Assembly: GCA_033442325.1 (NCBI GenBank)
Contig: JAWQFM010000006.1
Coordinates: 1,749,508-1,813,507, forward strand
Reading direction: 5' to 3'
DNA: 64,000 nucleotides
Source of the DNA: Salpingoeca rosetta
Lineage: Eukaryota > Protista > Choanoflagellata
Below are positions 3,641 through 63,600 of the stretch, in pieces. The notes under the pieces are model-generated. The model saw only the letters and a list, made by a program, of their open reading frames with translations, was not told the origin of the DNA and searched no databases. The position numbers and the translations under genes were made by a program. Within the stretch, counting starts at the first letter, position 1; each line of letters starts with the position of its first letter.

Positions 3641-4587
3641 TGTCTTGGTTGGTTGGCTGTCCTTCGTACTGATGTGCGCAGACCTTCCGACGTTCTGTTC
3701 TCTTCTGTTACCCTCTCACCACCAAACCACGTGTGTTTCTGTGTGGAGCGAATGCGTGCGTCTCAGCGTTCGTAATCGCCTGCTGCACTGCTGTCTGCTG
3801 CGCCACACAAAATCTGGTCGTTCTTCCTACAGTTTGTGCTGTCGTGTCCGTAATTGAGCCGTGCGATAATTATTTGAAGATGTAAACAAATTATCGTCTT
3901 GGCCAGCGCGAAGAGAATTTTGCGTGGCCGCCAGCCAATCACCAGCAAGCAGCCGCCCACGCCATCAGCGTTTCTGCGACCTGACTCAGGCAGCGCTTTT
4001 TGCTGATGCCGTATGCGCCGTTCCTTCCCTTGTTTTGCCCTCTCCCTCTCCCGTTCTCTTCCTCGCTTTGCTTTGTTGTTGGTGTTTGGTGGTGTGGGAA
4101 AGCGCGCGGTTGGGGTTTGAACGGTCGGTCATCCCAACGGCCCGGCCCGTTCAGCTGGCAAGACAATCAACGCAGCGGCGCAGCTAACAACGTGGTTGCA
4201 CTCTGTGCCCGTGTTGAAGAAGGACAACACCGGCAGGAAGCACTCCAAGGAAGGACACCAAGGAAGGACGCTTGGCTGACGCGGAACAAGAACGACAGCA
4301 GCCAACAGAGGTGGGAACAGTGTGTGTGTATCGTGTGTGAGAAGGAGAGAGAGAGAGTGTGTGTGTGTCTTCATGACGTAAGTGCGCGGTGCATGGTGTG
4401 TGCCTTGTGAGTTGGTTTCCACCAGCACGCTCATCCATGCACTACCACCACCAGCACGCTCATCCATGCACCACCACCGCGCTCATCCATGCACCACCAT
4501 TACACTGTCACCATACAACGCCCCCCCCACCCACCTCTCTCGCACTCTCTTCCAGCAAAACGTCGTGCATACGCAAGCTTTGCAAGT

Positions 4588-4841
4588 ATGAGCGACGGCC
4601 AGAAGCAGCAAGCACCAGCACAACAGCAGTACTCGCAATTCAACGCACAGCCCGCCGGACTTCCTTCACAACAACAGCAGCATCAGCAGCAACAAGCCAT
4701 GGACTTGCCTCGGTCCGACACCTTCAGCGGACTCCCCTCATACGTCATCACCACATCGTCCAACGGTGGTGCCGGCGAGAACGTGCGTGCTGATGCCACC
4801 ACACACCACCAACACCACCAGCACCACCAGCAGCACGAACA

Positions 4842-4883
<42 letters not shown>

Positions 4884-5590
4884 CATGATCGTGAGCATGC
4901 CCTCGGGTGTTGTTGACCCGTCTGGAATGCAACAGCAGCACCAGTTCTCGCAGGGCCAAAGCGACCACCAGCGCTACCAGCAAAGCCACATGCCGCACGG
5001 GCACCCCCAGCAGCTTCACGCGGGTCTGCCCTCTGCTTTGCCTCACCACAGCCAGTACATGATCGTCCCGCAAAATGTGTCATATGCCGCAGCGCAGGAA
5101 CACGGTGGTGGTGAGCACAAGCTGTCTACCTCATCGGCCGACCCGTCCCTTATGCCCATGCTTAGCGTGCCGGCACCACACAGCCACGCTCAGCAGCAGC
5201 ACCAGCAGCAGTTACAGGAGCACCATCATCAGCAACACCACCAGCAGCACCAGCACCATCAACAGCAACAGCAGCACCACCAACAACAACATGACTCGCA
5301 AATGCCAGTGTCCATGGCTCCCATGATGCAGATGCAGATGAACCCACTTGCACAATCCCAGCAGCCGCAGCAGATGATGATGATGCCGGGCGCCGCCCAG
5401 CACGTGGCGCCGCACCACATGCAGGCAATACACCTCCCGCCACAGCAGGAGCAACAGGCCATGCAGGTGCTGCACCACGATCAGGACAAACAGCAACACC
5501 AGCAGCACCAGCAGCACCAGCAGCAGCACTCTCTGCATCAGCTTCCACACGCGCACCATCAGCACCCGCTGCTCGCCAACCAGCAACAGG

Positions 5591-5627
<37 letters not shown>

Positions 5628-8111: not shown

Positions 8112-8180
<69 letters not shown>

Positions 8181-8183
8181 GTG

Positions 8184-8222
<39 letters not shown>

Positions 8223-9164
8223 CTGTGTGCCTTTTTTTGTTTGTGTTTTTCGTGTTGAAGGTCCCAGCTTGTGCGAAAACCAACACACGTCCCAGTCCCC
8301 AAGCCAATTTGCCGTGCACCATTTATGGCCCTTTTGATTGACGCAGCTGCCTTCCTTGTCTTGCTTGTTTCCGGGTGTGCGCTCAGGCGTCGCAAGAAGA
8401 ACCGCCTGTATGCCAAGCGCAGCCGTCAACGCAAAACACAAAAGTCAGTTGCTGCACTACACTCGCCTGTCTGCTTACTTGTTTGTCTGCTCACTTGTTT
8501 GTTTGTTTGCTTGCTTGCTTGCTTGCCAGCTCAACTTTCCGCAAGGGCTTCCTACCTTGTGTGTGCTGTTCGTCATTTCCATGCTCATCATTGAAACGGT
8601 CACAACTGTGATGATGACTACCGCGGTTCTGCCACACTTCCTCACCCCCACCCAACTCACTCACCTACTTGTTGCACTTTCGCCTCCTTGCTCGTTGTGT
8701 GTGTGTGTGTGTGTATGTGTGTGTGTGTGTGTGCATGTCTCGTTTTGATCTCTGCCGCTGCTGTCTCTGCCGCTGCTGCTGTCAGGTTGGAGGATACACT
8801 GACCAAGTACGAAGAGCTGCAACGCACGCTCAGCCCAGGTGCAAATACTGGCACAGTGCACCATCACAGCACAGACGCGCCTGGCGGTGGTGGCGGTGGT
8901 GGCGGTGACGGTATCACAACAGCGACACCATCTTCGTCCATCGCCACATCGGTTGAAACGGGCACGGCAGGGAACAACCACAACTCCGGCAACGCGGCCA
9001 ATGCGAACGCCAGCGCAAATGATGGCGCCGCGTCTGCTACCGACGATGCCGCTGCCACCACCACTGTTACATCGGACGCTGATGTGAGCATGACACCACG
9101 GAGCCACCATGATGACGTTGGCAGTGGCGCTCCGCCCGCAAAGCTTGCCAAGACAACCGAATAG
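4588..9164 (+). CDS. Poly-Q/His-rich bZIP transcription factor with Maf-like extended homology and basic region (3 exons)
   Basis: Exon 1 (4588-~8093) ends EEWLNMKVVDFNRFAKSKRLTPDEIEDLKRA. Splicing to ~8387 gives RRRKKNRLYAKRSRQRKTQ, and splicing to ~8786 gives KLEDTLTKYEELQRTLSP, with a stop at 9162-9164. KNRxYA resembles the Maf basic region (KNRGYA). Confidence 0.75.
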
Positions 9165-11747: not shown

Positions 11748-14700
11748 TCAGCACATGGACTCCTCGTGGTTTCCCGTGGAGGAAGGGGCTGCCATCCACT
11801 CGTGCGTGCTGGTAAGGTGCGACGCCGCCTGCGACGGTGCCGTGGCCTGTGAGCTGGCAGTTCGCGAAAACGACCCTTGCGATCCGGAGCTCGACACCTC
11901 CATCAGCGGGGAAAGCGGCTGGTTGCGCAGATCCCGCACATACGAGGACGAGCGCTGGCTGCCGGGCCCGGACGACGCCGAATATGACGACGACGCAAAC
12001 GAAGCTGTGGAATCACCGCGCTGCCCATCGTGCCCCTGTTGCTGCTGTTGCTGTTGCTGTTGCTGCTGCTGTTGCTGCGCTTGCTCCTGCTGCTGCATCG
12101 AGTCGCCGTTTGGCCGCACGTGGTCCTGGTGCCCGTGGTCAACCACAACAACATGCTGCTGCTGCTGCTGCTGCTGGGCGGACCCCTTCTTCTTGCTCTT
12201 CTTGTTCTTCGAGTGCTTCTGCTTGCCCTTGCGGTTCACAATTGGCGGGTGCACCTCCACAGATGCGTCCGCTGCCGTGGACGCCGTTGGTGCAGGGCCG
12301 CTGTGCACATCCGCTGCCGTGCCCGCGGTGGCTGGGCTGGGCGGCGATGGTGTCACCGGTGCAGTAGTCAGGTCCTCGTACGAGCCCTCAACAGAGGCAG
12401 ACGACCGCTTGCTGGCTGCCGAGGTGCGCCCGTGCTGCCCGTCGTGGTGGTGGTGGTGCAAGGGGTGCAGCAGCGTCTGGAAGTGGCGCCACAGGCCCCG
12501 ACGAGGCGCAGCATGGCGCAGCTGCACATCTGGCACAACAATCGACGTGTGCTTGTGCATCTGCTTCTTGTGGCTGCGCATGCGCCGTGTTCCGAGCGGT
12601 GCCTTCTCGTGCACTTGCGTGCTTGTGCGCTCAAACGCGTGGCGCGACAGCCGCACCGTGATCTTGTCGCCCAGGTCCGCGCACACCTTCACCACTTCGT
12701 CGAGCGTGGCGTGCTCCAGGTCGTGCCACGTCGTTGCGTTGGTGTTCTTCACCTTGAGCAGCCGCTGACCCGGCTTCACCTTGCCAGAGAGGCGGTCCGA
12801 CGTCACCTCGTCAACAACAAGGCGGCTCACGCGCGTGTTGGGGTCGTACACGTCCGCAAACAGCAAGCCGTAGTTGTCCCCTTCCTTCTGAATGTGCACG
12901 TCGTGGTGCGAGAGGTCGTCCTTCAGCGGCCACATGTGCCGATACATCACGTCCGTCACAATGCGCGTTGGCTTCTTCGACACGTGGCTGGAGCGGCGCC
13001 GCCTGGGTTTCTCCGCGCCCTCACCGCCTGCCGCCGCCTGCATGTCAGCCTCGGTCGGCATGGGCAGCCCTGCGCGCGGGAGCATTGCGCGCACGGGCAC
13101 AAACGTGGGCTTGGCGCGCGGCACGCTGGCGAAGATGCACGGGCGGTGCTTGAACCAGTTGACGTACATGCGCAGGTGGCCATACGACACGGGCCGCTGC
13201 GTGGTTGCGCGCAGCACCACCATGTTGAGCACGTCGCTCTCGGCCGCCATCACCTCCAGCGACTCCAGCGTCAGGTCCTTGCCGTGCTGATCGTTCACCG
13301 CAACAATGCGGTCGCCGCAAAACAGCAAATTCAGCGCAGAGGACCCGGCCTCCACGCCAGAGACATACAGCTCGTGATGGGCCGTCTCAATCACGTCAAA
13401 GCCAAGGCACTCTGCGTTGACGTTGCGGCGCACCTCCACCTCCTTCACAGCGAGCAGCGGGCCCTTGGTGGTACGCGCAGCCATGTCGCTCTTCGACCTG
13501 TGCTTCGTGTGCAGCTTGGGCATTGGGCCTGCGCCCGTGGTGTCGATGCCGGTGGCCTGCTGCATCTCCATCATGTTCATGGCGCCGCCCTCACCAGCAA
13601 CGGGCCGTCGCACCACCAGCTTGATCTGCAGCACGCCCAGGATGATGCGCTCTGCCTCCGCAGCCGTCAGGAACCGCGTGTCCTCGCCGCCAACCAACAG
13701 CACCTCGTCCAAGGGCTGCAGCAGCCGGTGCGCCAGCGAGCCGGCCACCGTGTGCTTGACATAGATCTTCGAGCCCAGCGACGTGAGCGAGAAGCCAAAG
13801 TCCTCGCGGAAGTCCTTGCGCTCCAGCACCACCGTGAACACGTCTCGGCCGGTCGCGGGCATGGGCGGGTACGAGTCGCGGCGGGCGGTGCGGCCATCGC
13901 CACTTTCGCCCTCTGTTCCGCTCTCGCTCGAGCGGCGCATGCTGCCGCCACTGCTGCTGCTGGTGCGGCGGCGGCGGCGGCGACGGTGGCTGCCCTTCTT
14001 CTTCCTGCCACCGGCACCGCTGGTCGATGAACGGCGTGGCCGCGGTGCTCCGCCACCACTGCCATCCAACAACACGCCATCCTCATCGTCCTCGTCCTCC
14101 TCATCATCCTCGTCCTCCTCCTCGTCCTCGTCATCATCCTCGTCATCATACTCCTCATCCTCGTCTTCTTCGTCCTCTTCCTCTTCATCTTCATCTTCCT
14201 CCATGAGGTCACTGAGGCTGCTGCGGGGCGATGCGCGCGGGGTGGATGGTCGCGCCACCCGCCGCCTGTGGTGCCGCTTGCGCCACTTCTTCCGCTCCTG
14301 CGCACGCCGGTGCTGCCAGCTGGCCACCGTGTCTGCGCGGCCACGTGCCTGGCGCCTGGCCAGAGCCACCACCACGTCGGCGTGGCTCGTGATGAACTGC
14401 TTGACGTCCTCGTGTGACCACCCCTTCACGGGCACCTTGTTCACCTCCACAATGCAGTCGCCCTCCTTCAGGCCAAAGTGCTCTGCGATCCCGCCCTCGT
14501 TCACCTTGGTGATGATGTGGCGGCCCTTGTGCGTCGTGCCAAAGGTCAGCCCAAACGGCACGTTGGACGTGCGCTGCAAGTTCACGCGGATCATCTGCAC
14601 GTGCGACTGCTTGCGGCGCTTGTGCGTGAAGAACGCAGCGTGTGCACCGGCAACGTGCTTCAGCAGCTCGTACTGCTCCATGCAGATGTTGGAGTTGGAC

Positions 14701-15994
14701 GTGGCCGTGAGCCAGTGCAGCGGGTTGTCGTCGTCCGCGCCCGGTTCCGGCAGATTAATGTCCTTCATCTCACCCGTCTCGTCGTGGTAGTTGAAGGCCA
14801 CTGTCTCAATCCACGCGTTGTCCGTGTTGCGCGGGTCGTGCAGGAGGCCACGGTACACCTCCAAGATGGCGGCGCGGCTAAGCCGTTCCTTGATCATCTC
14901 TTCCAGCGCTGCCGAGGACAGGCTCGTGCCGCCAGCACCACCGGCACCGCCCTCCGTCGTCGACGCCGCTGCCGCTGCTGCTGACGCTGTTCCAGCCTGT
15001 GTGGCTGTGACGGTCGCGGGTGTGGCTGTTGGCCCGCCTTTGTTCGTGGCGTTGGCGGCGTGCAGCTGCAGGTCCTGGGTGGACACGATGTTGGCCAGCT
15101 TGGACGCGCGCACCGTCTCTGTGCCGACCTTACCGCGGAAGGCAAGCTCAAGCGCACGCTGCATAGCCGTCTGCAGCTCCTCGCCAGGGCGGATGAACAC
15201 GGAGGGGAGGTAGCTGGTGCCTGTGACGCTGTTCTTCAGCGCAAGCACTTCCAGCACGGGGTGTTTGTCCTGCGTCACCACCTGCCCCTTGGAGTTGCGC
15301 TTCCAACGGGAGATGATCATGTGCACGGCGTGGTTTGGACCCCACAGCGCAAACATGCCGCGGCCAGCAACGCCCGTGCGCCCGTACGGGTAGAGGGGGA
15401 GGCCGCGCGGATTGAGGTCGTACAAACCCTCGTAGCTGCGGCGGTCCACCTCGTCGTCGTTGGAGTTGAAGTGGGGCAGGTCGCGGCTTCGCACACGGCC
15501 CTCGGCAATGGCCTGCAGCTCACGGATGTTGGGATCTGCGCGTGGGTGCTTGAGCACATTCGGCGCCGTGTAGAACGGTGGACGGTACACGGACACGGGG
15601 TGGCCCCAGTCTGTGTCGCTTGGCGTCGCACGGCGCACATCCTCCGTGCCAGGGTACATGCCCTCGCACACCCGGCAGGACAGCGTGGGCAGGCCAACGT
15701 CATCCGCTGGCGACTCCTGCTCTTGCTCCTGCAGCTCCTCTTCTTGCTGTTGCTGTTGCTGTTGCTGCTGTTGTTGCTGCTGCTGCTGCTGCTGGTCCAC
15801 TGCAGCATCACCGTACGAGAAGGGTGGAGACGAAGTCGCGGTGGTTGCTTCCGTCGTGGTTGCTTCCGTCGTGGTGGCGGTCGTTGTCTCTGTTGGTGCG
15901 CCGCGTTGCGTCCACTGCCCTGTGGGCGACGTGGCTTCCGCTGCCTGCACCGGGCGAGCTGGTGCTGCTCCGGCATCGTCCACGCTTCTTCGCT

Positions 15995-16025
<31 letters not shown>

Positions 16026-16859
16026 TTGTGACGCGACCATCGCGCCCGTGCTGGCTGCGCCCTGGGAGGAAGAGGCGCTGTACGAGCCATCGAGCATGGG
16101 CGTTGCGCCGTCAATCGGCGCCGGGTGCTGGCGAGCGAGCGCGCCCACCTCGGGCTGCTTCACCACCGTGAGCACAAACGACGGTGGCTGCCGCTGTAGG
16201 AGGCGGCGCACAAGCCCCGCGTTGGCCGTGTGCACGTCAAACTGCCCAATGCGAAGGATGTGGTCGTACTTCTGCAGGCCAGCGCGCTTGGCGGCGCTGT
16301 TGTTGTACACGCGCAAGATAAACGTGCCCTCCTGCGCAGCCGGGTTGGTCTGGATCTCGTTTGGGTCGCAGCTGCCCAGCACAACGCCAATGTCTGCCTC
16401 CACATCTGTTGCCTGCGGGTTTGGGCGTGTCAGTGTGCATTCGCGCGTGGGATACGCCGCAACGTGGGGCTTGAGCTTCATGTCGCTGCGCTTGTACAGG
16501 TCATATGCCTTCGGCTCATGGCGAACGACGAGCGTGACGCGGTCCATCGCCTTGGCCAGCGCCTCCTGCGCATGTGAGACCTTCACTTCCTCCATGGGCC
16601 GGCCGTTGATGGACAGAATGCGGTCGCCCTCGCGCAGGTCGCCGTTGGCGTCGGCGATGGAGTTCGGTAGGATCCTGCCGATGAAGACGGGGGCGCGGCG
16701 GTCCGTTTCGCCCAGCAGGCGCAGGCCAAGGTCCAGGGTGTTTCGCGGCTTGCGAAGGTTCACGCGGCGTGTTTCACCGGTGGAGCGCACCTCAAGCTCC
16801 CGCTCTTGCTGCGCAACGGCAGCGGCCAACCGGTCTGACCCTGCGCACGCGAGCGATGG

Positions 16860-16940
<81 letters not shown>

Positions 16941-19694
16941 TGAGTGAGTGAGTGAGTGCCTCAGTGTCAGAAGAAGAAGAAGGCAAGTGCTCGAGGGAAC
17001 GAAAAAAGGAGGAGCAGGAACAGCAAAGGCAAGGACTACGACAGAAGCGAGGAAGAAGAGGAGCGACTGCGTGCGCGTACCTTGCACGACGTCGGGCACC
17101 GGGGAGGTGTCATCAATGGGCTCGTCGATCTCGCTGCTGTTGCTGCCTGTACCCGCTGTGAACTTGGCGTGGTGGCCGTGTGACGTGCGCACGTCTCCGG
17201 ACACGGCGTCCTCCACGTCAAACGCAGAGGCAGACACGTGTGGGACTGGCATGGAACGGTCACTCATGGGCGTGAGAGGTTCACCAGAGTCCTCTGCGGG
17301 CAGTCGAGGGCTGATGCGAGGCAGGTTGGGGAACTTGTTGAAGTCGGTTTCAAGCGCCAGCACGGGCTTGCTCTGCGTGTCTGCAATGTTGCCTGCAGTC
17401 ACACGCTTCTCACGCTCATCCATGTGCACATGCAAACCTACAGCGCATGTGTGTGTTGGGGGAGGTGAGGAGTGGCACATGGGGTGCGTCGAGGTGGGTA
17501 CGCAACATGCAATATGAAGCGCGGTTGTGCAGGCACTCAACCAGACGCACATGCGAACATGTGGTACGGGAGCATGCACACAGCGAACTAAAATCCCACC
17601 CACCTTTGGGGTTGTAAGCGACTGTGATGACGGCCTGTTGCACAGCGTGCAGCTGGGCAAGCACCTCAACCACGCTCGCCTTTTCCACGCTGCGGCCATT
17701 GAGCGTGAGAATCTGGTCACCAACATGAAGATGGCTCACCTACAAGACGAGAGACGCGGCGGCACATCACAGTGCGTGAGAAGGAAACGACGCTTCTCGT
17801 GTGGGGATGGGTGAAGTAAAAAGGAAAAGGAAAGGGAAAAGGAAAACTCCACCGGATTCTCTGACAGACGCGTATACACACACATACACACAGACAGGCA
17901 CACAAAAGCACACACAGACAGACACAGACACACACACACGCAGACACACAGACACAGACGCAAGATGACATACGCGATCAGCCATGCTCTGTGGCACGAT
18001 GCGGGAGATGAAGACGCCTGTTGGGCGGTACATGTCGACGTAACCGCTGGGGCCGACAATGTCGATGCCAAAGCTGTTGTTCTGGCGCACAAGCTCCGTC
18101 TGCTCGTGGTTGGAACAACATGAGGGGAAGGGGAGGGGTGCGTGTGATGGAGAGTCAATGGAGGCCAGGCAATTCGCGCATGACAAACTGCGCGATAACA
18201 AAGCACAGTCGAACGAACAAACAAGCGAACAAGCCAAACAGGGTGATGGTGCAAACACGCGAACGTTATCATCAAAGCAATCACAACACGCGCAAGTAAA
18301 ACGTGCAAGCGCCACGCGCGCACCTCTCGAACAGACTGCGCAGCGAGGACGGGCGTGTCCTCCTGGCGCGGGGACCAGACAGGGCGATCTGTGGACTGCT
18401 GGCTGGCGGCAGCAGGGGGCGAAGTCGCCTGCTGGGACGACTGGAAGCGCGGTGGCAGCCACGACTCCGTTCGCCGCAGGATGTCAGACTTCATCACCGT
18501 CCGCGTCTGCACAAATATGTGTATGACGTGTTTGTGGCAGGGATTTGTGAGCAGGAGCGAAACTGCTTGGGGGTTACGCAGCGTGACGCACACAGGCTTA
18601 CTGGCAAACAGACTGACAGACACACAAACACACAGAAGCGTAAACGTCCCCAACACCCACCCACCCACCCACCCACCCACCCACACACGTGCGCGCGCAC
18701 ACACACCAGCTTGTATCGTGCGCCAATTTCCTCCTCGTCGGCGTCGATGCGCTGCAGACGGCGGAGCGCATCGACGTGCATGGCGACCTCAAGCTCAACG
18801 TGGTCACGCGCCTTGGATAGGGCTCCAGACACCTGCCGCACACTCCACGAGTGCGCGTCCACGCCGTTGATGCGGAAGATCTGGTCGCCGACGCGTGGCA
18901 GCTCGCTGCCGGGCCCAAGCACCTCCACCGCAGACACAAACACGCCGCTGTGCTCAGCGGGGACAACGCCTACGGAAAGGGTCGCAGCGATTGTGGAAGA
19001 CACGCAACGTGTGCCCATGCGTGAGTTAATGTGTGTGTGCGTGTGTGTGTGTGTTAAGTGTGTGAAGTGTGTGTGTGTGTGAAGTGTTTGTGTGGCGGTG
19101 AGAAGCACTGCTCGCACACGATGATGCACAACACGCGGCAGCCACGACAACGACGACAACACAGCAACAGCCAGGACAAAGTCAGTACGGCTGCAGCATG
19201 ACATGACACGCACGCACCGAGACGCTTCCCGTGACCGGTGAGGCCAATGAGGGAGATGGGGAACTGGCCGTCGACGCGGGCGAGCGTGAGTGTGCGGCGC
19301 GCGCCGAGATGCGACTTGGGGGACGTGCTGCACAGGTCATGTGCGTGCGTGTGTGTTTGTATGTGTTTGCGTATGTGTGTTTGTATGTTTGTGTGTTAAT
19401 GAGCGAGTGGGAAACAACGGATGGAAGTTCAAGAACAAAAGAAAGAAGTGTAGGGATCATACAAGGCATGGTGATAGCAGCAGACATGGGCGGGACACGC
19501 GATGGTGATGGTGACTCACGGGCGCTCTGGGATCTCCTGCTCCCGCGTCAACTTCACGCCAATGCGGTATCTGGTCAGGGCACAAGCACAACACAACATG
19601 AGGGGCAAGGCGAGACAGCAGGGAACGCATTCGATTGCACACAAATAAAACCACGCACAGGGTACAACAAGCGTGAAACACACAAGCAAATGCG

Positions 19695-25419: not shown

Positions 25420-30964
<5,545 letters not shown>

Positions 30965-31190: not shown

Positions 31191-31233
31191 CTACAGCAGC
31201 ACACACATCTTCGACTTTGGCGCAGCAAGCGAC

Positions 31234-31321
<88 letters not shown>

Positions 31322-31529
31322 GCCACTGCTGAAACCGCTTCATCAGCAGCGCCGCCGGTGCCAGACGAATACCGGCTGCATGCAGGGACTCGCATGACAC
31401 CTGACCAGACTCTACGAGGATGGCGAGCAGGTCAAAGCTGACCACACCAAGGTGCAGGAATGTGGCGTGGACGTGTGAATACAGCTTGCTTGATTCAAGC
31501 CACGCCTTGAACTCTGGGTCAAACTGTGG

Positions 31530-31627
<98 letters not shown>

Positions 31628-34252
31628 GCAGTGGTGCCTGCGCGGAACATGGACAGAGGAGAATGACAGGATACAAAGGAGCTATGGCGTGAGTGATGGG
31701 GTATGAACATGCACACACGCAGGCACACACAGGCACACACAGGCACACACAGGCACACACAGGCACGCACGTGCGTCCTCACCCTCTGCACGCCGGTATC
31801 CCGTGCAGACGCCACGACCGTGCGAATGGTGTCTGCGTGCACGCGCAGCTGCTGTGCACGATCACCACCAGCAGCGCCAAACTCAACCACGGCGTCGATA
31901 TCAAACAGCGCCAGCACAGCCGCTCGTACCGTGGCGTGCTGCTGTGGTGGCGGCACGTGCAGCACTTGCGTGAAGTACTGGTCAAGGGCTGTGGCTGTCG
32001 CTTTGCTGACAACATCTGGCAAGGTCATCGCCAGCTCGCGAATGCCATGCAGCGAGTCACCTGCAGTCTCGTTGGCAGCGGTACGGTCACCGGCTGTGCT
32101 GTGGCTGTTGTGCCACGCGCGACCCACAAACATGGGCACAACACGACGCAGACGAATCGTGCCAGCGAGCTGATGTGCCCGGGACTGCAGTGCCAGCATC
32201 GTCATCCACTCCAGCAGCACGTTGTCGCAGTAATCGTCTTCGTTCAGTGTCTGCATGCGCGCAAGAGCACCCGCAGAGACAATGGGGCAGGCCACCAGGC
32301 TCAGCCCAATCGCCGTCATGAACGACAGCTTAAAGTTGAGGCCCGTCTCCAGGTTGTTGGCATCCAGGAACGCGACCAGGTTGCGCTGCTCCAACAAGGG
32401 ATGCAGCGCCATCACCAGCCCGCTGTTGGCGCGTTGCCTGTGGTGAACGTATTGTGGTGATGGAGGTTGACGTGAGGAGGGGAAGTTGTGGTGGTAGGTT
32501 GCAGCGACACACACACACATACACATACACATACACATACACACGCAATACACATACACATACACATACACGCGCAATACACACACACACAACTCACCTG
32601 TAGCTGATGAAGACGTCGTACTTGTCCTGCAGACCGAGAACGGGCAAGAGAGAGCCGTACTTGGCGACCAGATCATCGAGCGACAGCAGCTGTTCGTCCA
32701 CCCACATGTCCTGCTTGCTCTTGTGGTGGTGCAGCACATCCTCAAAGAACAGCAGCGTCTTGTCGTCAAATGGCACCAACAGGCTGCTCTTCAGCTCGGG
32801 GTAGCGCCGGTGAACGGCTTGGCGCACTGTGCTATGCAGCATGTGCAGCATGGCGCGCGGCTGCGCGCTCGTGATCTTCATTTTGATGCCGCCAACAGCC
32901 GGCACAAGCTGCAGCTCAAGCTTAGTCGACTCCATGAAGCAAACAGCGTGGGTGCGGCTCAGCTTGGGCGCCTGAGATGCGCCGTGCTGCGCATGCGCCA
33001 TCACGTGGGCCAGCACCACCGTGAACAGTCCTTCGGGCAGGAAGGTCGCGTGCTTGATTCCAGCAACTTGCACGCTCGCAGCCTTCTTGAACTGCTTCAG
33101 GCTGAAAGCCACGTAGGCCGTCTTCTCCTCGTGTCCAGCGTATGGGTTGGCCTGCTGTGCTGCTGTTGTGCTCAGCGACACGGATGCCATGGTGCTGGTA
33201 TTGTGACAAATCGTCATCGGCAGGATGGCAGGGACCAGGTACTGCTGTTCTTGCTCTGTTGTGTCGGTTTTGACACTGGCGTTGTCTACTGCTGCACCGT
33301 GGCCGGCATGGCCGCTACTCGCTGTAGTGTCGCCACCCACCAGCTTGGGTGGAGAATACTCAATGCACAGCCCGTACTGCATCATGAGGCGCAGGAACGG
33401 CATCACCAAGTTGCTGTGCACGTCGTTCCACAGCACGTCCAGCAGGCGGCGGTGCAGAATGCCACAGTCAACGAGGTCGTCCCACAGCTGCGCACCAACG
33501 GCCCTCGCCTCGCTATCCCGCACGTCGTGATGCAGGTCGAAGTTGCGGATGACGCGCGTCATCGTGTCCACCGCCCACTGCGGGCTCAGGATCACATAAT
33601 CTTCCATGCCTGGCACGTGGTCGTAGTACAGGACCATGGAATACAGGTGCAGGAACTGGAGGCAGGCCCGTGTCTCGTCACGCGTGCGCAGCCCACACGT
33701 GCACGCAATGTCCACCACCTCGTCAAACGTCAGCAGCGGCCGTTTGTCGTCCTTGCTCAGTGCCATCAGTTTGTCGTAGAGATGGAGGTAGGGGACAGCC
33801 ACTTCCTGGTTCACGTACTCCTGCGCCAGTGCTGTGGAGGAGATCGTCTGGCGCAGGTCCTGGATCATGGGATCACGGATGGACTTGGTGTTGTCGACGG
33901 GCCAGAACCACAGACCATGCTTGTCGTTGTGGACGACGCCAGGGAAAGCGGGGTTGTGCCGCAGGCGGCTGTAGATGTCACGGGAGATGGCCTCATGCTG
34001 TTTCCGCTGGCTGACCACATCAGCAAAGGTGCCAACGATGAGGACGGGTGCGCCCTTGGCGTGGAGGTGAAGGGAGGAGAGCCAGTGCTCCATAAACTCC
34101 CACGTCTCATCTCGCTTGCTCTCGTCTTGGTGCAGCAGGTCCTCCATGGAAAACACCAGCAGGTACACCGCGTACCTGTTGGGTGGGGGAGCAAAAGGGT
34201 GGGGATGTGGTGAGGGTGTCAGGTGAGGGAAGGTGTGGCGGTGGACAGGAGG

Positions 34253-34323
<71 letters not shown>

Positions 34324-34853
34324 TACACGCACACAACTTGGACTCACTCTGTGAGGAAGAAAGGGTGGAAGATGTAGAAGGTGGACTGGCCGCCCAGGTC
34401 AAATACTTTGAACGTGACCCGCGCGTTTTCTTCACCGATGGTCGCGTCCAAATTGAGGTCTTTGATCGCCTTCTCCAACTCTTCGTCCACCACAGCTTGC
34501 GCAACAGCACCCGTTGTTCCTTCCGCTTGCTCACCACCACCATCGCTATTGTGTTTGTCAGACAACGGGCGAGTTGAGTCACCTTGCTTCACGTGCGCAC
34601 TCGCGGTGGATGCACCAACTGCCGCGTCGTTATCTGCATGCAACAAACCCAGACCACCACACACTTCACTGCCATCATCGCCACCCTCATCTGTGCCTTC
34701 ATGCCCTGCATCAGCTCTGCCATCTTCATCGCGCGCTTCCCTCTTCAGCCGTTGCTTGTGCGCGTGCAGCCGCTGTGCGAGCGCCGTGTCTCTCAGACTC
34801 CGCGCCGCCTCTGAGATGTTCGCCGTCACCGCCTGATAGGGAGAGACAGAGAC

Positions 34854-34921
<68 letters not shown>

Positions 34922-35908
34922 TGTGTGTGTGTGTGTGTGTGTCTGTGTGTGCAGTGAAGGTCGCGGCGCCACCGTTTCAACACCCCCTTCTCAAACAGAC
35001 TTCTTGACAACACCTGAAACAAAGCAGGTAGGAGTGAACAGCAGCGCACCTTCCACTGGCAAATCTCCATCGCGTCGAGGGTGACAGCCATGTCCTGGCT
35101 CGCGGCACCAAGGGTGGAGTGCTGGCTCTTGTTGAAGTCTTGCTCCATCAGCGATTGCAGCGTCGTCGTCTTGCCTGCTCGGCCCTCGCCCACAAGCATG
35201 AGCTTGGCCCGTGCCGCCATCTGCATGTCTCCTCTCTCCGCGATGGTACGCATCATCGCCTTCACTTCACTGAAGTAGCGAAGCGTTGCCTGCAAGCAGC
35301 ACGTGCAGCGAGTGCAACATGGACATGTCAGCCAGACAGTGAACACAAGCATTCGTCCCGGCAGATGTGTTCACGTTCACAATGGAGAGGGTGTGTGTGT
35401 GCGTGTGTGTGTGTGTGTGTGTGTGCGTGTGTGTGTGTGTGTTGCAAACAGACAGACAGACACACTGAAAGACAAAGAGACAGACACACTGAAAGACAAA
35501 GAAACAGACTCACAGACAACGTGCCCCCCCCCACACACACACACACATACACGCACACCCAGGAGTACAGGGCATCATACTCACGTCCTGCTCCTGTTCG
35601 TCTTCGTCGTCATCGGCATCAGCAATCCCGGGCTCGGCGTTGTTGAAGCGCCGCTGAAATGCTTCCTGCTCGCGGTCAGACCTGGCACATGGTATTGTGG
35701 CGACGGTGGTGGTGGTGGTGGTGGTGGTGGTGAATGAGTGGCATCAGACACACGCACACACATGTACGACATACATACATGGCTTCAGATACGCACCCCA
35801 CACTCACCAGCTGAGTTGGATGTTGCGGTCTGGCGGGAGATGCGCAGCAAACGCCTGCGCCACTTTGCGTCCATTCACTCGAAGCCTGTGCAAAGGGGAG
35901 GGGGGTTG

Positions 35909-35975
<67 letters not shown>

Positions 35976-36476
35976 GGGCAGAACGCAGCAGCGAGGCACA
36001 AGCATGGTCTGAAGAGTTGCGTACCGAAGAGTCTCCAGCGTTGAGTTTTCCTTCAACGCCTTTGCCAGTTCCGCGCCGCTTTTGGCGTTGAGTTTGCACT
36101 TGGACAGGCTGCAGTTGGACAGCAAGCAGCGACCATGGTGATGGCAATCCACATACAGGCGTGCGTGCGTGCGTGTGCGTGCGCGTGAGCACTTACAACA
36201 GTTTGCATGGTGCGTCCAAACGTGTGCTTGCGCGAGCCGGCACAATCTACCACACGACACACCACCGACATCGTATTGACTCTTTTGAAACACGTACTCG
36301 AGCAGCTTGAGGGCGGTGTTGGAGCGCAGCATGTCGGCCAGCGCCAGGGCACCGGCAGCACCGACCGAGTTGTTCTCCAACCTGCACCCGCCCACAGGCA
36401 AGATCACATGCGCAAAGCAAATGCTGGTCACCTCGTAGCACATCAAAGACAGGGAGGGACAGAGACAAACAGACAA

Positions 36477-36516
<40 letters not shown>

Positions 36517-36533
36517 ACAGATGGAGAGAGACA

Positions 36534-36594
<61 letters not shown>

Positions 36595-36833
36595 GCTGGC
36601 TGACTGACACACCTAACACGCATTTACGCACGGCCACATCCAAAAGCACATTCACACATACACGAGAGCCTCGAGTGGTGACGTTCGGAGGGCGTCCGCA
36701 AGCATGGCGACACCTTGACCTGTCAGGTTGTTCTGCTTCAGGCTGGATGGACGAACATGTGAATGGCTCATGAGCTACAGATTGGTGTACACATGGACAC
36801 GGAGAGAAAGGGAGACACACACACAGGCACAAG

Positions 36834-36911
<78 letters not shown>

Positions 36912-37086
36912 CGTACTTGACGGATTGAAGAGTGTGGTTGCTGGAGAGCATTCGGACCAAATCGCCTGCAGCGTCATCTGAGATGCGATTCCCCCACAGC
37001 CTGCACCACATCCATGGGATGGGTTACAAGAGAGCATGTGTGCAGATAAGCAGGACTCATGTGGCCAATCACACACACACACACAC

Positions 37087-37132
<46 letters not shown>

Positions 37133-37139
37133 CACACAG

Positions 37140-37203
<64 letters not shown>

Positions 37204-37990
37204 CCCGAGTTTCTGGACGGTCTTGTTTGTCTGCAGAACCTTTGCAATCGCCTTGACCCCTTGATCGCCGATGGAGCTCATGCTCATGCTGATATCACAC
37301 ACAAGTCCGAGAAGCGGCAACATGTCAAGGGGTGAGGCAACACACTCATATGTGCGTATGCAGCCAGATGGATTGGTTCCAGCAGGGTGGCGCTGTCTGG
37401 CACACGGAGAGGCTGAACGACAGCCAGCAAAAGCCAGTGGCGTGTGCACTTGTGTCTGTGAGTGTGCTGCACACGTACTAGAGCTTGGTGACGGATGCGT
37501 TGGCCTTCATGGCCTCGGCCACGCACTTTGCGCCATGGACCCCGAGGCGGAGGCCAATGAAACTGTAAACCGATCAAGCAGGCAAGAGGGCAAGCAAAGC
37601 AGGCGTGCAGCAGTGGCAGCACAGTTGTCAGTGGCAGCACAGTTGTCGGCGGTGACATCACACTTTCAAGTCTGAGCAGCAAGCAGCAAGCAGCAAGCAG
37701 ATCGGCGAGGATGCGGCTCAACGCAAAAGTCGCTCGTTCAATCGATCCAAGCTCACATTGCATCACACCCCTTTCCCCCCCCCTCTCTCTCTCTTCCTTG
37801 GCACTTGATGCTCTCATCCAATATCCAACTCATTCGCAGCTCACTCTGCCGTGTCGCCGCATGTGTTGTCTGCGATGGACAGGATCTTGTTCTTCACCAC
37901 ATCTGTGAGCTTCCCCTTGTCAAGTAAGGCCCTGAGATCCTTCTTGAACAGCGAGTCAGAGGTTGACACGGCATTGGTGGTGCTTGTCAT
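31191..37990 (-). CDS. ROCO protein: RI-like LRRs, ROC GTPase, COR, TIR, SAM-like domain, CaaX
   Basis: 28-aa RI/NLRC3-type LRRs (35808-37562). ROC P-loop KLMLVGEGRAGKTT (~35167-35190), G3 FDLGGQ and G4 IVGTFAD. COR region (~32650-33880). TIR YDVFISYR|Q...AFLD...DNVLLEW (~31850-32625). SAM-like FKAWLESSKLYSHVHATFLHLGVVSFDLL. Ends PKSKMCVLL* (TAG at 31193-31191). Confidence 0.88.
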
Positions 37991-38524
37991 GGTGGCCGGC
38001 GTAGTTGAGAGATGGATCGATTGCTTCAACGTTGTCATTCATGTCATGCGACGACCAGTGAGGACGTGGGTACAATTTGTTTGCTTGTTGCCAAGAAGCG
38101 GGAATGGATTTGCGCTCTTTTTGTCCTTGACTCCACTTCACACATAAGTTGATTTGGTGGTCAGAGCCACAGTTTACTCTTGAGTCACACCAAGGCAATA
38201 CAGTTGCCTGGCAAGCAAGAAGTACACAAAGGCACTGGTGATGAGAAGAAAGGCAAGTAGACGGGCGGAGCACTGCGATCGAAGCGAGTCCACACTCAAC
38301 AAGCAGAAACGTCGAGGGGCGTCAACTCCAGGTCGCTTGCTCATACAGTACAAGAGAAACAACCCGCCACTTCACACAGTCAAATATCACAGTTCATCAT
38401 CAAAGAGAGAAGAAAAAAGAGGGGAAGATCAAAGGCAGTCAGAACAGGGGAGAAAAGGGGGAAGGTTCAAGTACATTACAAGGGAGCAGCAAAAGGCATG
38501 ACGGCAGATGCGACATGGAGATGC

Positions 38525-60699: not shown

Positions 60700-63600
60700 C
60701 TAGCTGTTTGCCTCTGTGCATGCGAGACAGCCCCTGACGAGCGCCTGGCAGAGCGGCTGCTCGGATGCGGAACACACATTCACCAGAGCATGCACCGCTT
60801 CCTCAGAGAGAAGACCAGAGTTGAAGAACATGAGCCCAGCCATCAAAAACACGCGGTCAAGATCAACGCGTTTGGCCGTCGCCATATCTGCTGCAGTGGC
60901 GGCGCCCGCTGTTGCTGCGGATGAACTGCCACTCTCACCCTCACCGACCCGATCACCACCACTACCAACAGGGAAACCATCAGCCCTTTGAGTTGACACA
61001 GGTGCTGGTGCTGGTGATGATGACATGGACGACACACGGGATGACGGGCCTGTGGTGGTGCTGCCGAGCGCAAGGAAGAGTAAGCTGCGCTGGCGTGCGT
61101 CGCCGCAAGCGGCACTGAACAGACAGATGCACGCCTCGCGCCAGTGCTGTCCACGCAACACGTTGGGCAAGCTCAGGCACACCCACTCTGCCACCGCTGC
61201 GCCAAAACCAAGGCTCAGCATGCGCGCAAACACGTGGTACGTGATGTGTGCATGTGCAATGAGCCGCGAGCGCACGTCAGACATGAACGTGGGCCCTTCC
61301 TGCGGTTTTGTCCACTGCGCCATCACCATTTGCAGGATTTGCCGGGCTGGCCAAAAGTCCGTCAGCAAAAAGGACAGCGAGCGCGCCAAAACGAGAGCGG
61401 ACGGCTCGTCCACCACCGTCTCCACCATACGAGTGATGCGATCGCCAAAGTTCAGGGGCAGTCGCTCCACAACAGCGCGTGGGGACGCGTCTCCAAGCTG
61501 CTCGTGGATCAGGTACTCGTCCTTGGAGTACAGCAGCGCCGTGGCGCACACCGTCTCACTCACGTCCAGAAGAGAGAAGAGCCCAGAGCGGTTGTTGACG
61601 TTACCGGCAAGCGTCAGCAGCGCGTCTGTCTCGCGGCTGTCCAGCACAAACGACAGCACGAGCCGAACGAGCGCAGAGAGCGTGCGGGAGTATGATGCTT
61701 CTGAGAGGTTGCCGGGCGCCAAACACATGGACGACAAGTCAGCCGTCAGGTCATACGTCAAGTTTGCTTTGTCCGCCTCCTCGGGGAACGATATGATCAC
61801 CTGGCGATGCGTCGTGTGTTTTGGGGGGGGGGGCGGGGAAGGGAGGCGAGAGAGGATGTGAATCGGTGATTGGTGTGTTTGAAAGTTGTGTACGTGCAAT
61901 TGAGTGCGGGGGTGTGTGACACACAACAAAGCACACCACACGACTACCCAGAACGACGAGCAGAAAGCCACACACACACACACACACACACACACAAGAC
62001 ACACACATTCTCTCTCATACACACACGCACACACACACACACATGCACGCACACACGTGCACACCTGGATTGCTGCATCGAATGCGCGGGCCCAAAACAG
62101 GCGGGGAACCCAAGCCGTGGTGGCGGCGGTGATCTGGGAATGCTCGAGCAACGCGTGTTTGGTCAGCACCTGCACGGCGTCACGAACGTGATCGATAAAG
62201 GGCAACGCTGCCAGGCTCAAGTGGCCTTGTGCAAGATACCTGTGACGATGATGATGGTGGTGGCAGGTGAACGGAAGAAAGGAATGGTGTCTTGCGATTG
62301 GATGTTGTATTGCGGCGAACAATAATTGCCGTGACCCACGCGTTCATCGCACATGCCTTGCAGGTGTGCGAAAAGAGGCACATGCACACACGCACACGCA
62401 CACACGCACACACGCACACATGCACGCATGCACACATAGGCGGGCGCACACAGTAGCCGTCGTCGTTTACACTTACTTGATGCCTGTGAGTGCGGCCATG
62501 CGAACCGACGGGAGCTGGCTGCCGAGAGCCGTGTGGAGCATGTTCGAGATCAACTCCAGTCGGCGGTGGTCGCCCTGACAGAACAACCACACAGATAAAG
62601 TTGTCATGAAGACAACAACCAACATCGTTCAGCGTGCTTGGGTGATACAATACAATCCTACACAACAACAGCGTGGCCATGCGGCTCGGCAATTGCAACA
62701 CACACACACACACACTACACCCATGCGCACGCGTGAGACCTACACGCCATGGTGTTTCTCAAGGAGCACGTCGCATGACATACATCGTGGTTAATGGCCT
62801 GGAGCTTGCACAGGATGGGGATAACGGAGCGAAGAACAATGTGGTCGTCTGGGTTGGGGTGGGCAAAGCGAGGAGAGGGGGGGGGCCAAAACAAAATGTG
62901 AGTGGGGTGAAGTGGCAGCATTCAGCGCTCCCGATACATAAGCACCTTTCATGGGTTGTTGTTGCCTTCACACGCAAACACTGACACGCACGCGCGTACT
63001 CTTCGTTTCTCATGCACCCACCTGCAATCAGTTCACTGTTGGCCAAGTCGAAGAGGACAACAGCAATGTCACTGAGCTGCTTTGCATCATGCACTTTATC
63101 CAACAAGACGTGCAGCGCTTCGCAGGCGCCGTTGAGGATCTAAAGAGGCAAAAGTGGTTTGTGAAGGTGTGTTAATTGGGCACTGGTATGGTATGACGAT
63201 ACATTCCAACGACACATCGCAATCAACCAGACACACGAACAGCATACACGTAAACATGCAGCCACACACATGCAGCCACACACACACACACACACAACGG
63301 ATTGGGATACCTTGATAGCCTGGGAATCTCGCTGAACAAGCGACAGGCACATCTCGATGACCTGTGGCAGATAGATCAAGAAGCGGTGGCACTGGAGCTC
63401 GCCAGACGCAGCGTGCTCATCAACACAGCGCCGCAGCGAGGACACGGATTTCTGAAATGGGTGTGGGTGTGGGTGTGGAGATATGTTCAACAGGGGGTGC
63501 ACAAAATGAGGTTGGTCAATGGTGGTGAACTGTATGAAGGCAATAAACCCACAGTGGTCATCATACACACACACACACAAAAGCAAAGGAAACGAATCCA

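What the first reader, a model, noticed from the sequence alone, without database searches (positions are those of the whole stretch)
31191..37990. LRR-ROC-COR-TIR-SAM protein with a SARM1-like catalytic glutamate: candidate GTPase-gated NADase immune receptor
Seen: a TIR domain sits where LRRK-type ROCOs carry a kinase. Its helix-C motif NEDDYCDNVLLEW (Glu codon at 32211-32209) parallels SARM1 DHDCKDWVHKEI, and a SAM-like domain follows. Known: enzymatic TIRs (SARM1, plant TNLs, Thoeris ThsB) cleave NAD+ to ADPR or cADPR variants upon oligomerisation, and ROC-COR modules dimerise depending on nucleotide state. Inference: an NLR-like logic (LRR sensor, NTPase switch, TIR effector) built on a ROCO chassis in a unicellular relative of animals.
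Basis: partly seen in the sequence, partly recalled or inferred. Interest (0 to 1): 0.8.

Follow-up and report, generated by a model that had tools for sequence, protein, structure and literature searches.

The report
Choanoflagellate Roco GTPase with TIR-SAM tail
This is an intact gene of a choanoflagellate (Salpingoeca rosetta) that joins leucine-rich repeats, a Roc-COR GTPase switch, a TIR enzyme domain and a SAM domain. It is one more of about 30 sister genes, and the TIR domain of one sister has already been shown to make cyclic ADP-ribose.

Summary
On the minus strand, 38038..31191, lies a clean 13-exon gene. All 12 introns are GT..AG and the product is 1396 aa. Its order is N-terminal helix, five RNI-type LRRs plus cap, Roc GTPase, COR-A/COR-B, TIR, polyQ, SAM, polyQ, CaaX (CVLL).

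The Glu codon at 32211-32209 is real (E1106, motif DNVLLEW). A family profile aligns it to the catalytic E642 of human SARM1. The TIR and SAM folds rest on family profiles and AlphaFold models, not on Pfam hits of this copy alone.

The gene is not unique. I found 30 annotated S. rosetta paralogs, and this scan already reported two sister genes on other DNA of the same genome.

A 2026 preprint (Hurieva et al.) expressed the TIR of paralog F2UB80/PTSG_12359, which is 56% identical to this one. It made cADPR. The preprint says a point mutation of the catalytic Glu abolished cADPR for all TIRs in its Figure 3, and no NAD+ depletion is listed for this TIR.

Catalysis is therefore well supported by proxy. 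GTPase gating and an immune role remain inference. Peculiar to this copy: no ankyrin repeats, pure polyQ tracts around the SAM, and a prenylation box.

Verdict: new member of a known kind. No RNA reads could be laid.

The parts
31191..38038 (-). Whole coding span of the gene: 13 exons, 1396 aa plus stop
   Evidence: Spliced model translates without internal stops. All 12 introns are GT..AG.
37845..38038 (-). Exon 1: N-terminal region (aa 1-65). It holds the helix shared with the N-termini of paralogs.
   Evidence: tblastn of P0012 residues 9-39 hits 37945-37853. An in-frame stop lies just upstream of M1.
35808..37288 (-). Six short exons (37288-37205, 37000-36917, 36742-36662, 36381-36298, 36108-36025, 35885-35808). 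They encode five RNI-type LRRs of 27-28 aa plus a C-terminal cap (aa 65-230).
   Evidence: Splice sites read directly. Model aa 46-362 aligns to the LRR_6-positive N-terminus of P0034 at E 5.5e-47. Single exons are not significant in Pfam.
35585..35681 (-). Acidic linker exon (aa 230-262). There are no ankyrin repeats here, unlike most paralogs.
   Evidence: tblastn of the ankyrin-bearing P0012 and P0029 finds no Ank match in the window.
35050..35289 (-). Roc GTPase, G1/P-loop exon (GEGRAGKT, Lys302) and switch I
   Evidence: Pfam Roc E 6.5e-8, 33.3 bits, above the cut-off of 27.
34348..34832 (-). Roc exon with a low-complexity acidic insert of about 135 aa and the G3 motif DLGGQ (D487, Q491)
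   Evidence: Pfam Roc 0.019 on its last 29 aa. 80-87% identical to paralogs at the G3 end.
32598..34175 (-). Large exon: rest of Roc (G4-like GTFAD), COR-A (about 33790-33227), COR-B (about 33055-32759), and the linker and first strand of the TIR (KYDVFISYR, 32623-32598)
   Evidence: Pfam COR-A 1.1e-18 and COR-B 5.3e-5. 82-85% identical to six paralogs.
31783..32437 (-). TIR domain, main exon (aa 1030-1248). It is an extended TIR of about 225 aa.
   Evidence: The family profile hits SARM1 TIR at E 3.2e-9. The model of paralog P0001 gives Z 15.0 to RUN1 TIR and Z 12.6 to SARM1 TIR. 56% identical to the assayed F2UB80 TIR.
32209..32211 (-). Codon of the predicted catalytic Glu (E1106, in DNVLLEW)
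   Evidence: Coordinates. HMMER aligns it to SARM1 E642. It is conserved in at least 90% of 28 family TIRs. It lies in the helix at model residues 94-111. The same column is Glu1118 of the assayed paralog.
31529..31627 (-). Pure CAA repeat encoding a polyQ tract between TIR and SAM
31320..31532 (-). SAM domain (five-helix bundle, aa about 1284-1354)
   Evidence: AlphaFold pLDDT 95.5. The top 29 rows of the VIA-align scan of 48,161 chains are all SAM domains: p73 SAM Z 8.5 (rmsd 1.6, 60 aa) and SARM1 SAM Z 7.1. 15 of 23 family members hit Pfam SAM_2, but this copy does not.
31235..31321 (-). Second polyQ tract (CAA then CAG repeats) after the SAM
31194..31205 (-). C-terminal CaaX box CVLL (Cys1393), preceded by KSK. 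It predicts geranylgeranylation.
   Evidence: Read directly. CaaX-like ends also occur in P0020 (CALM), P0026 (CLLM) and P0032 (CVIA).

Best explanation
This is an intact, selectively constrained member of the Salpingoeca rosetta Roco-TIR-SAM family.

Shown here or in the literature:
- The domain order is LRR, Roc, COR-A/B, TIR, SAM, CaaX.
- The TIR keeps every family-invariant residue, including the Glu that aligns with SARM1 E642.
- A sister TIR with the same motif makes cADPR. The preprint reports the activity as Glu-dependent.

Inferred mechanism:
- The Roc-COR module acts as a nucleotide-dependent dimerisation switch.
- The N-terminal LRRs hold the protein inactive or receive an input.
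- On switching, TIR domains are brought together, and a TIR active site needs self-association to form.
- The C-terminal SAM domain helps through polymerisation, and the prenyl anchor concentrates the protein on a membrane.
- The assembled TIRs convert NAD+ to cADPR as a second messenger, with or without net NAD+ loss.

The large paralog family has a conserved switch and catalytic core and divergent LRR and SAM ends. That pattern suggests a repertoire of sensors feeding one output, analogous to NLRs but not homologous to them.
For: - Gene model: 13 exons, canonical splice sites, no internal stop.
- Domains: Roc and COR by Pfam. TIR by family profile, with SARM1 TIR the best PDB hit at E 3.2e-9 and Glu aligned to E642. 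TIR also by structure, Z 15.0 to RUN1 and Z 12.6 to SARM1 with 140 of 140 residues aligned. SAM by structure.
- Glu conservation: at least 90% of 28 family TIRs, including distant relatives P0008-P0010.
- Paralog assay: F2UB80 = P0022 (1352 aa, TIR 1034-1255, Glu1118) is listed as active and cADPR-positive. The text says a point mutation of the catalytic Glu abolished production.
- The window TIR is 56% identical to the assayed TIR, with an identical DNVLLEW motif.
- Purifying selection: dN/dS is 0.09-0.49 in Roc, COR, TIR and SAM against two paralogs.
- Conserved core, variable ends: Roc G3-G5 is 90% and COR-A 81% identical to paralogs, against LRR 33% and SAM 28%.
- About 30 annotated paralogs.
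- CaaX box read directly.
Against: - Nothing was measured for this copy. Its own TIR and SAM pieces give no Pfam or PDB sequence hit.
- The folded TIR model is of paralog P0001, not of this copy.
- The Trp four residues before the Glu in SARM1 (DWVHKE) is Asn here (DNVLLE). The assayed paralog shares this and is active.
- The assayed isolated TIR is not listed as depleting NAD+, so a death-by-depletion role is not supported.
- No RNA evidence was obtained: read laying laid nothing.
- No annotated protein identical to this gene turned up in three searches.
- Control by GTP, LRR input, SAM polymerisation and prenylation are all inferred from domain identity.
- There are only five LRRs, and LRR dN/dS rests on 24-27 codons.
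Confidence: 0.6

Rival explanations
1. SARM1-like executioner. On activation the TIR mainly destroys NAD+, causing metabolic collapse or cell death, rather than making a messenger.
For: The best sequence match of the family profile is SARM1 TIR. A SAM domain is attached, as in SARM1. The homologous long TIR of Guillardia theta L1IYH1 is listed with both cADPR and NAD+ depletion.
Against: The S. rosetta paralog's row has the NAD+ depletion column empty, and the preprint says most tested TIRs did not deplete NAD+ even after overnight expression. An isolated domain in E. coli may under-report the activity of an oligomerised full-length protein.
Confidence: 0.2
2. Scaffold-only TIR. The TIR works as a protein-protein adaptor, as classically assumed for animal TLR/MyD88 TIRs, and the Glu is incidental.
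For: TIR domains can act as adaptors (established knowledge). S. rosetta encodes other TIR proteins that could be partners (PMC6040629).
Against: The Glu and the surrounding DNVLLEW are nearly invariant across about 28 family TIRs at 28-93% identity. The paralog TIR is listed as active, and the preprint reports a Glu-dependent activity.
Confidence: 0.08
3. Not immunity. The family is a general signalling module, for example sensing bacterial or environmental cues that steer choanoflagellate development, feeding or mating. cADPR or Ca2+ would be the output, and paralog number would reflect cue diversity rather than an arms race.
For: No test links any member to infection. dN/dS is below 1 everywhere measured, with no sign of positive selection. 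Neighbouring genes are ordinary (bZIP_Maf-like, multi-PDZ). Metazoan Rocos such as LRRK2 and DAPK1 are not dedicated immune receptors (established knowledge).
Against: LRR plus NTPase switch plus TIR is the hallmark logic of plant TNLs and of bacterial TIR defence systems (established knowledge). Lineage-specific expansion to about 30 copies with divergent ends is typical of immune repertoires. Pairwise dN/dS cannot detect site-specific positive selection.
Confidence: 0.3
4. Silent or decaying copy. The gene is an unexpressed duplicate on its way to becoming a pseudogene.
For: No annotated protein identical to it turned up in three database searches. Long pure CAA/CAG microsatellites lie inside the coding region. 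No RNA reads could be laid.
Against: The 4191-nt frame is open across 13 exons with 12 canonical introns. dN/dS is 0.09-0.49 in all domains. All family-invariant TIR residues are retained.
Confidence: 0.07

Closest known systems
S. rosetta F2UB80 / PTSG_12359 (P0022) and its roughly 30 Roco-TIR paralogs
   Same: Same family. It has LRR_6, Roc, COR-A/B, an extended TIR with DNVLLEW and a C-terminal SAM. Its TIR was assayed and makes cADPR.
   Different: P0022 and most paralogs carry ankyrin repeats between LRR and Roc, and this copy has none (as in P0034 and P0035). This copy has polyQ linkers and a CVLL prenylation box. TIR identity is only 56%. This copy has not been assayed.
SARM1 (ARM-SAM-SAM-TIR NAD+ hydrolase of animals)
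   Same: SARM1 TIR is the best PDB sequence match of the family TIR profile. The catalytic Glu, FISYR, the FxD...LExG BB-loop region and a SAM domain are shared.
   Different: The domain order is reversed (TIR then a single SAM). There is no ARM autoinhibitory domain, and a Roc-COR GTPase and LRRs stand upstream instead. The Trp of SARM1's WxxxE is Asn here. The TIR is about 85 aa longer, with a plant-TIR-like helical region. Choanoflagellates have separate SARM1 homologues (PMC6040629).
LRRK2 / Roco family (LRRK1/2, MFHAS1, DAPK1, Dictyostelium and bacterial Rocos)
   Same: Defining Roc-COR tandem with N-terminal LRRs. G1 is GxxxxGKT, G3 is DxxGQ, and the G4-like GTFAD resembles LRRK2 GTHLD (recalled from memory). 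The output domain lies C-terminal to COR.
   Different: The output is a TIR-SAM instead of a kinase-WD40 (LRRK) or a death domain (DAPK1). There is an acidic insert of about 135 aa inside Roc.
Plant TIR-NB-LRR (TNL) receptors such as RUN1, RPP1, Roq1
   Same: Best structural match of the TIR model (Z 13-15). Same logic of repeat sensor, NTPase switch and enzymatic TIR.
   Different: The switch is a Ras-like Roc GTPase, not a STAND NB-ARC ATPase. The order is LRR-switch-TIR rather than TIR-switch-LRR. This is analogy, not homology, of the whole protein.
Guillardia theta L1IYH1 C-terminal TIR (assayed in the same preprint)
   Same: A long TIR (226 aa) at the C-terminus of a 1337-aa protein, with matching motifs (FxSYRQ, the Glu followed by Trp, LPDIVP). 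It is listed with cADPR and NAD+ depletion.
   Different: It comes from a cryptophyte, and I did not check its upstream architecture. The relationship (ancient or transferred) is unknown.

Membership tests
Roco proteins | Roc (Ras-of-complex) GTPase domain with intact G1 and G3 motifs | tested here: met
   Pfam Roc E 6.5e-8, above the cut-off. GEGRAGKT and DLGGQ read in the model.
Roco proteins | COR domain immediately C-terminal to Roc | tested here: met
   COR-A E 1.1e-18 (67.9 bits against a cut-off of 35.3). COR-B 5.3e-5, below cut-off.
TIR domain superfamily | TIR fold and sequence profile | tested here: met
   The family profile that includes this copy has SARM1, Roq1, L6 and RUN1 TIRs as its top PDB hits (E 3e-9 to 1e-4). 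The paralog model gives Z 15.0 and 12.6 to RUN1 and SARM1 TIRs. This copy's exon alone has no Pfam hit. Paralogs P0022 and P0035 pass the TIR_2 cut-off.
Enzymatic (NAD+-cleaving or cyclising) TIRs | Catalytic Glu on helix alphaC | tested here: met
   E1106 aligns to SARM1 E642. It lies in the helix at residues 94-111 of the model. It is nearly invariant in the family.
Enzymatic (NAD+-cleaving or cyclising) TIRs | Measured NAD+ turnover or cADPR production that depends on the Glu | not testable with these tools
   Reported only for paralog F2UB80, which is 56% identical. This copy has not been assayed.
SAM domain | Five-helix SAM fold | tested here: met
   pLDDT 95.5. The top 29 of 48,161 PDB representatives are all SAM domains, the best at Z 8.5 and rmsd 1.6. 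Sequence support exists only at family level: 15 of 23 hit SAM_2, and this copy does not.
NLR / STAND receptors | Central NACHT or NB-ARC STAND NTPase | tested here: not met
   Pfam finds only Roc/Ras-type GTPase and COR between the LRRs and the TIR. The logic is NLR-like, but the protein is not an NLR.
SARM1 orthologues | ARM - SAM - SAM - TIR architecture | tested here: not met
   There is no ARM domain, a single SAM lies after the TIR, and Roc-COR lies upstream.
CaaX-prenylated proteins | Cys at position -4 followed by two aliphatic residues and a terminal X | tested here: met
   The C-terminus is ...KSKMCVLL followed by the stop. Actual prenylation was not tested.

The most novel reading that the evidence does not exclude
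The roughly 30 Roco-TIR-SAM genes form a choanoflagellate innate-immune receptor repertoire built on a Ras-like GTPase instead of a STAND ATPase. Divergent LRR/ankyrin heads would sense different microbial cues. A gene-converted Roc-COR-TIR core would turn GTP state into TIR assembly, with cADPR as the alarm signal. This copy and a few others (CaaX-bearing) would be stationed on membranes. That would be a third, independent invention of the sensor-switch-TIR design, in the closest relatives of animals.
Probability: 0.25. Interest if true: 0.75.

Novelty: new member of a known kind. Interest (0 to 1): 0.4.

Why it matters
TIR enzymes couple pathogen sensing to NAD+-derived signals in bacteria and plants, and SARM1 does something similar in animal neurons. 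A family that wires the same enzyme to a Roc-COR GTPase would help on two fronts. The Roc-COR GTPase is the switch mutated in LRRK2 Parkinson's disease.

- It offers a tractable read-out (cADPR) for how Roc-COR nucleotide state controls a downstream domain.
- It could show what TIR signalling looked like just before animals arose.

This copy adds a membrane-anchor and polyQ variant to that family. The central idea and the catalytic activity of a sister TIR are already public, so the finding mainly extends a known family.

Tried and rejected
1. Pfam and PDB phmmer on this copy's TIR exon and SAM piece alone found nothing relevant. I therefore moved to family profiles and structure.

2. Pfam on single LRR exons was not significant, because the repeat unit straddles exon borders.

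3. RNA evidence could not be obtained.
- The share of words held by the candidate runs (0.72) does not tell RNA from DNA.

4. I looked for the annotated protein of this very gene in three word searches spanning 365-2691 aa. None is identical; the best is P0034, 77% over 795 aa.

5. LRR dN/dS is not informative: only 24-27 alignable codons against P0026 and none against P0020.

6. I did not fold this copy's own complete TIR. Its first strand lies in another exon and frame, so it has no single reference. I folded paralog P0001:545-795, with this copy in the alignment.

8. A tandem cluster was rejected: only one Roco copy lies in the 64-kb window.

Full report
WHAT IS THERE

The minus strand between 38038 and 31191 holds long open segments in alternating frames, separated by (GT)n-rich stretches. 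That is the pattern of a multi-exon eukaryotic gene.

I read the junctions directly and assembled 13 exons. They give a 4191-nt frame with a single terminal stop and 12 introns that all begin with GT and end with AG. Most donors are GTGAGT, GTACGT or GTATGT.

The product is 1396 aa. Its parts, in order:
- An N-terminal region of about 64 aa.
- Five 27-28-aa ribonuclease-inhibitor-type LRRs, each on its own exon, plus a cap.
- An acidic linker.
- A Roc GTPase: P-loop GEGRAGKT, an acidic insert of about 135 aa, G3 DLGGQ, and a G4-like GTFAD.
- COR-A and COR-B.
- A TIR domain split by an intron right after its first strand (…DVFISYR | QRANSG…).
- A pure CAA-encoded polyQ tract.
- A 70-aa helical domain.
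- A second polyQ tract.
- The C-terminus …KSKMCVLL.

31191 is the last base of the stop, 37990 is the second in-frame Met, and the Glu codon is exactly 32211-32209.

DOMAIN EVIDENCE

Pfam on stop-free exon pieces gives COR-A at E 1.1e-18, Roc at E 6.5e-8, and a sub-threshold COR-B.

This copy's TIR exon and its SAM piece give no Pfam or PDB sequence hit on their own.

Searches with the COR exon and with paralogs retrieved 30 annotated Salpingoeca rosetta proteins with the same Roc-COR-TIR core, plus a few relatives from other samples. None is identical to this gene. The best match is 85% in the COR exon, 66% in the TIR exon, and 77% over 795 aa for P0034. The window is therefore a further paralog. 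That it comes from S. rosetta is an inference from these matches and from earlier scan notes.

A 28-sequence alignment of the TIR regions (A1, this copy included) shows the DNVLLEW motif nearly invariant, down to relatives at 28-37% identity. As a profile, A1 has human SARM1 TIR as its best PDB hit (E 3.2e-9). Roq1, AT1G72930, L6, RPV1/RUN1, AbTIR and TcpB follow. The printed alignment puts the family Glu on SARM1 E642.

An AlphaFold model of paralog P0001:545-795 (pLDDT 83, pTM 0.84) places that Glu near the start of a long helix, residues 94-111. All Foldseek hits with E up to 1e-3 are TIR domains. VIA-align gives:
- Z 15.0 to RUN1 TIR (166 of 173 residues aligned).
- Z 12.6 to SARM1 TIR (140 of 140 aligned, rmsd 2.5, 22% identity).

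This TIR is a long one of about 225 aa, with a plant-TIR-like helical region.

The C-terminal piece of this copy folds with pLDDT 95.5 into five helices. Foldseek E-values are weak for such a short domain. An exhaustive VIA-align scan of 48,161 PDB representatives puts SAM domains in all of the top 29 rows: p73 SAM Z 8.5 (rmsd 1.6), EphA1 8.1, tankyrase 8.0, SARM1 SAM 7.1. Fifteen of 23 family members also hit Pfam SAM_2.

WHAT IS ALREADY KNOWN

Hurieva et al. (bioRxiv 2026, doi 10.64898/2026.04.20.719644) sampled eukaryotic TIRs with a predicted catalytic Glu and expressed them in E. coli. Their Table S4, entry 33, is F2UB80 of S. rosetta:
- 1352 aa, TIR at 1034-1255, catalytic residue 1118.
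- Marked 'Active: yes' and 'cADPR: yes'.
- Nothing entered under NAD+ depletion.

The text says that for the TIRs of their Figure 3 a point mutation of the Glu abolished cADPR production. It names S. rosetta among the non-metazoan producers, and the figure legend lists Roc, COR and LRR among the architectures drawn.

I verified that F2UB80 is P0022 (PTSG_12359). The length matches, the TIR start matches, and residue 1118 is the Glu of DNVLLEW. Its Pfam architecture is LRR_6, Ank, Roc, COR-A/B and TIR_2 above threshold. The window TIR is 56% identical to it.

Richter et al. 2018 (PMC6040629) had noted cytosolic choanoflagellate TIR proteins with ankyrin repeats and separate SARM1 homologues. 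They do not mention Roc. I found no paper treating the whole Roco-TIR protein or its GTPase control.

Two earlier notes of this scan, on other pieces of the same genome, reached the same reading for sister genes. I arrived at it independently and checked the preprint myself.

WHAT DISTINGUISHES THIS COPY

- It lacks the ankyrin repeats found in most paralogs. P0034 and P0035 lack them too.
- Its SAM is flanked by pure CAA/CAG polyQ tracts, where paralogs have Ser/Thr/Pro linkers.
- It ends in a CaaX box (CVLL, X = Leu, predicting geranylgeranylation) preceded by basic residues. Similar ends occur in P0020 (CALM), P0026 (CLLM) and P0032 (CVIA), but not in most paralogs. P0020 and P0026 also have the closest SAM domains.

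EVOLUTIONARY SIGNALS

Across 21 full-length sequences, identity of this copy to its paralogs varies by domain:
- Highest in the second half of Roc (90%), COR-A (81%) and the first half of the TIR (72%).
- Lowest in the LRRs (33%), the Roc insert (26%) and the SAM (28%).

I made codon comparisons with the genomic loci of P0026 and P0020 (L001, L002).
- dN/dS is 0.09-0.49 for every Roc, COR, TIR and SAM segment, so the gene is under purifying selection and not decaying.
- dS is 0.34-0.55 from Roc G3 through the first half of the TIR, but 0.76-1.9 in the Roc G1 exon, the second half of the TIR and the SAM.

That mosaic suggests gene conversion homogenising the switch and catalytic core while the ends diverge. 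Synonymous constraint is an alternative. The LRRs were too diverged for a meaningful dN/dS (24-27 codons).

The neighbouring genes (bZIP_Maf-like, multi-PDZ and others) are ordinary, and there is no second Roco copy in the window.

HOW IT MOST LIKELY WORKS

Shown: the domain order, the conserved catalytic Glu, and the cADPR-producing activity of a sister TIR, reported as Glu-dependent.

Inferred, from established knowledge of Roco proteins (nucleotide-dependent dimerisation through COR), of enzymatic TIRs (the active site forms only on self-association) and of SAM domains (polymerisation, as in the SARM1 ring):
- The LRRs and the Roc-COR nucleotide state decide whether TIR domains can pair.
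- The SAM and the prenyl anchor raise local concentration on a membrane.
- The paired TIRs turn NAD+ into cADPR.

The preprint's data favour messenger production over bulk NAD+ depletion for the isolated paralog TIR. An oligomerised full-length protein might behave differently.

An immune role is plausible, given the sensor-switch-TIR logic and the lineage-specific expansion. It is untested, and a role in sensing non-pathogenic cues fits equally well.

FAMILY MEMBERSHIP AND CAVEATS

The protein is a Roco and a TIR protein with a SAM domain. It is not an NLR, because it has no STAND NTPase. It is not a SARM1 orthologue, because it has no ARM domain and the domain order differs.

- The SARM1 Trp four residues before the Glu is Asn here. 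The active paralog shares that change.
- No RNA reads could be laid. 
- The folded TIR is that of a paralog, because this copy's TIR spans two exons in different frames and has no single reference.

VERDICT

This is a new member of a known kind, and interest is moderate.

Noticed in passing
window 31194-31205 (-); also the C-termini of P0020, P0026, P0032: The protein ends in a CaaX box (CVLL after KSK). Three paralogs end in CALM, CLLM and CVIA, while most paralogs do not. A subset of the family may be lipid-anchored to membranes.
   Followed up: partly
window 34174-32182 versus 35289-34350 and 32181-31320 (-), compared with L001 and L002: Synonymous divergence to two paralogs is 0.34-0.55 in the Roc-G3/COR/TIR-N core but 0.76-1.9 in the flanking Roc-G1, TIR-C and SAM parts. 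This may reflect gene conversion of the core among paralogs.
   Followed up: partly
window 31529-31627 and 31235-31321 (-): Pure CAA (33 codons) and CAG/CAA (16 + 13 codons) microsatellites encode polyQ tracts on both sides of the SAM domain. Paralogs have Ser/Thr/Pro-rich linkers instead.
   Followed up: no
window 34832-34430 (-), model aa 343-478: An acidic, low-complexity insert of about 135 aa sits inside the Roc domain between switch I and the G3 motif. It is also present, but poorly conserved (26-48% identity), in paralogs.
   Followed up: no
P0036 (PTSG_02681), P0033 (PTSG_05418), P0008, P0029, P0038: Family members carry other added domains.
- P0036 has a PNP_UDP_1 phosphorylase-superfamily domain C-terminal to the core.
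- P0033 has a G6PD_N piece at its N-terminus, possibly a gene-model fusion.
- P0029 and P0038 (another species) have a Rab/Ras-like GTPase in front of Roc.
- P0008 (EukProt transcript) has a kinase upstream of COR-TIR. It may belong to the 'Kinase TIR' class of Richter et al.
   Followed up: partly
introns of the gene, e.g. 37141-37200, 36835-36906, 36535-36590, 35911-35972, 34256-34315: Nearly every intron carries a (CA/GT)n microsatellite of 30-72 nt. One intron also has a (CAGG)n tract at 36478-36513.
   Followed up: no
window 4489-8334 (+), 11751-17726 (-), 29204-30961 (+), 60703-62322 (-): The large neighbouring ORFs are ordinary: a bZIP_Maf-like protein, a 1992-aa multi-PDZ protein, a weak TFIIA-like low-complexity ORF, and a weak huntingtin-HEAT-like ORF. 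There is no cluster of immune-type genes.
   Followed up: partly
window 31191-38038: No annotated protein identical to this gene appeared in three database searches covering lengths of 365-2691 aa, although 30 paralogs did. The gene may be unannotated or mis-modelled in the public S. rosetta annotation.
   Followed up: partly
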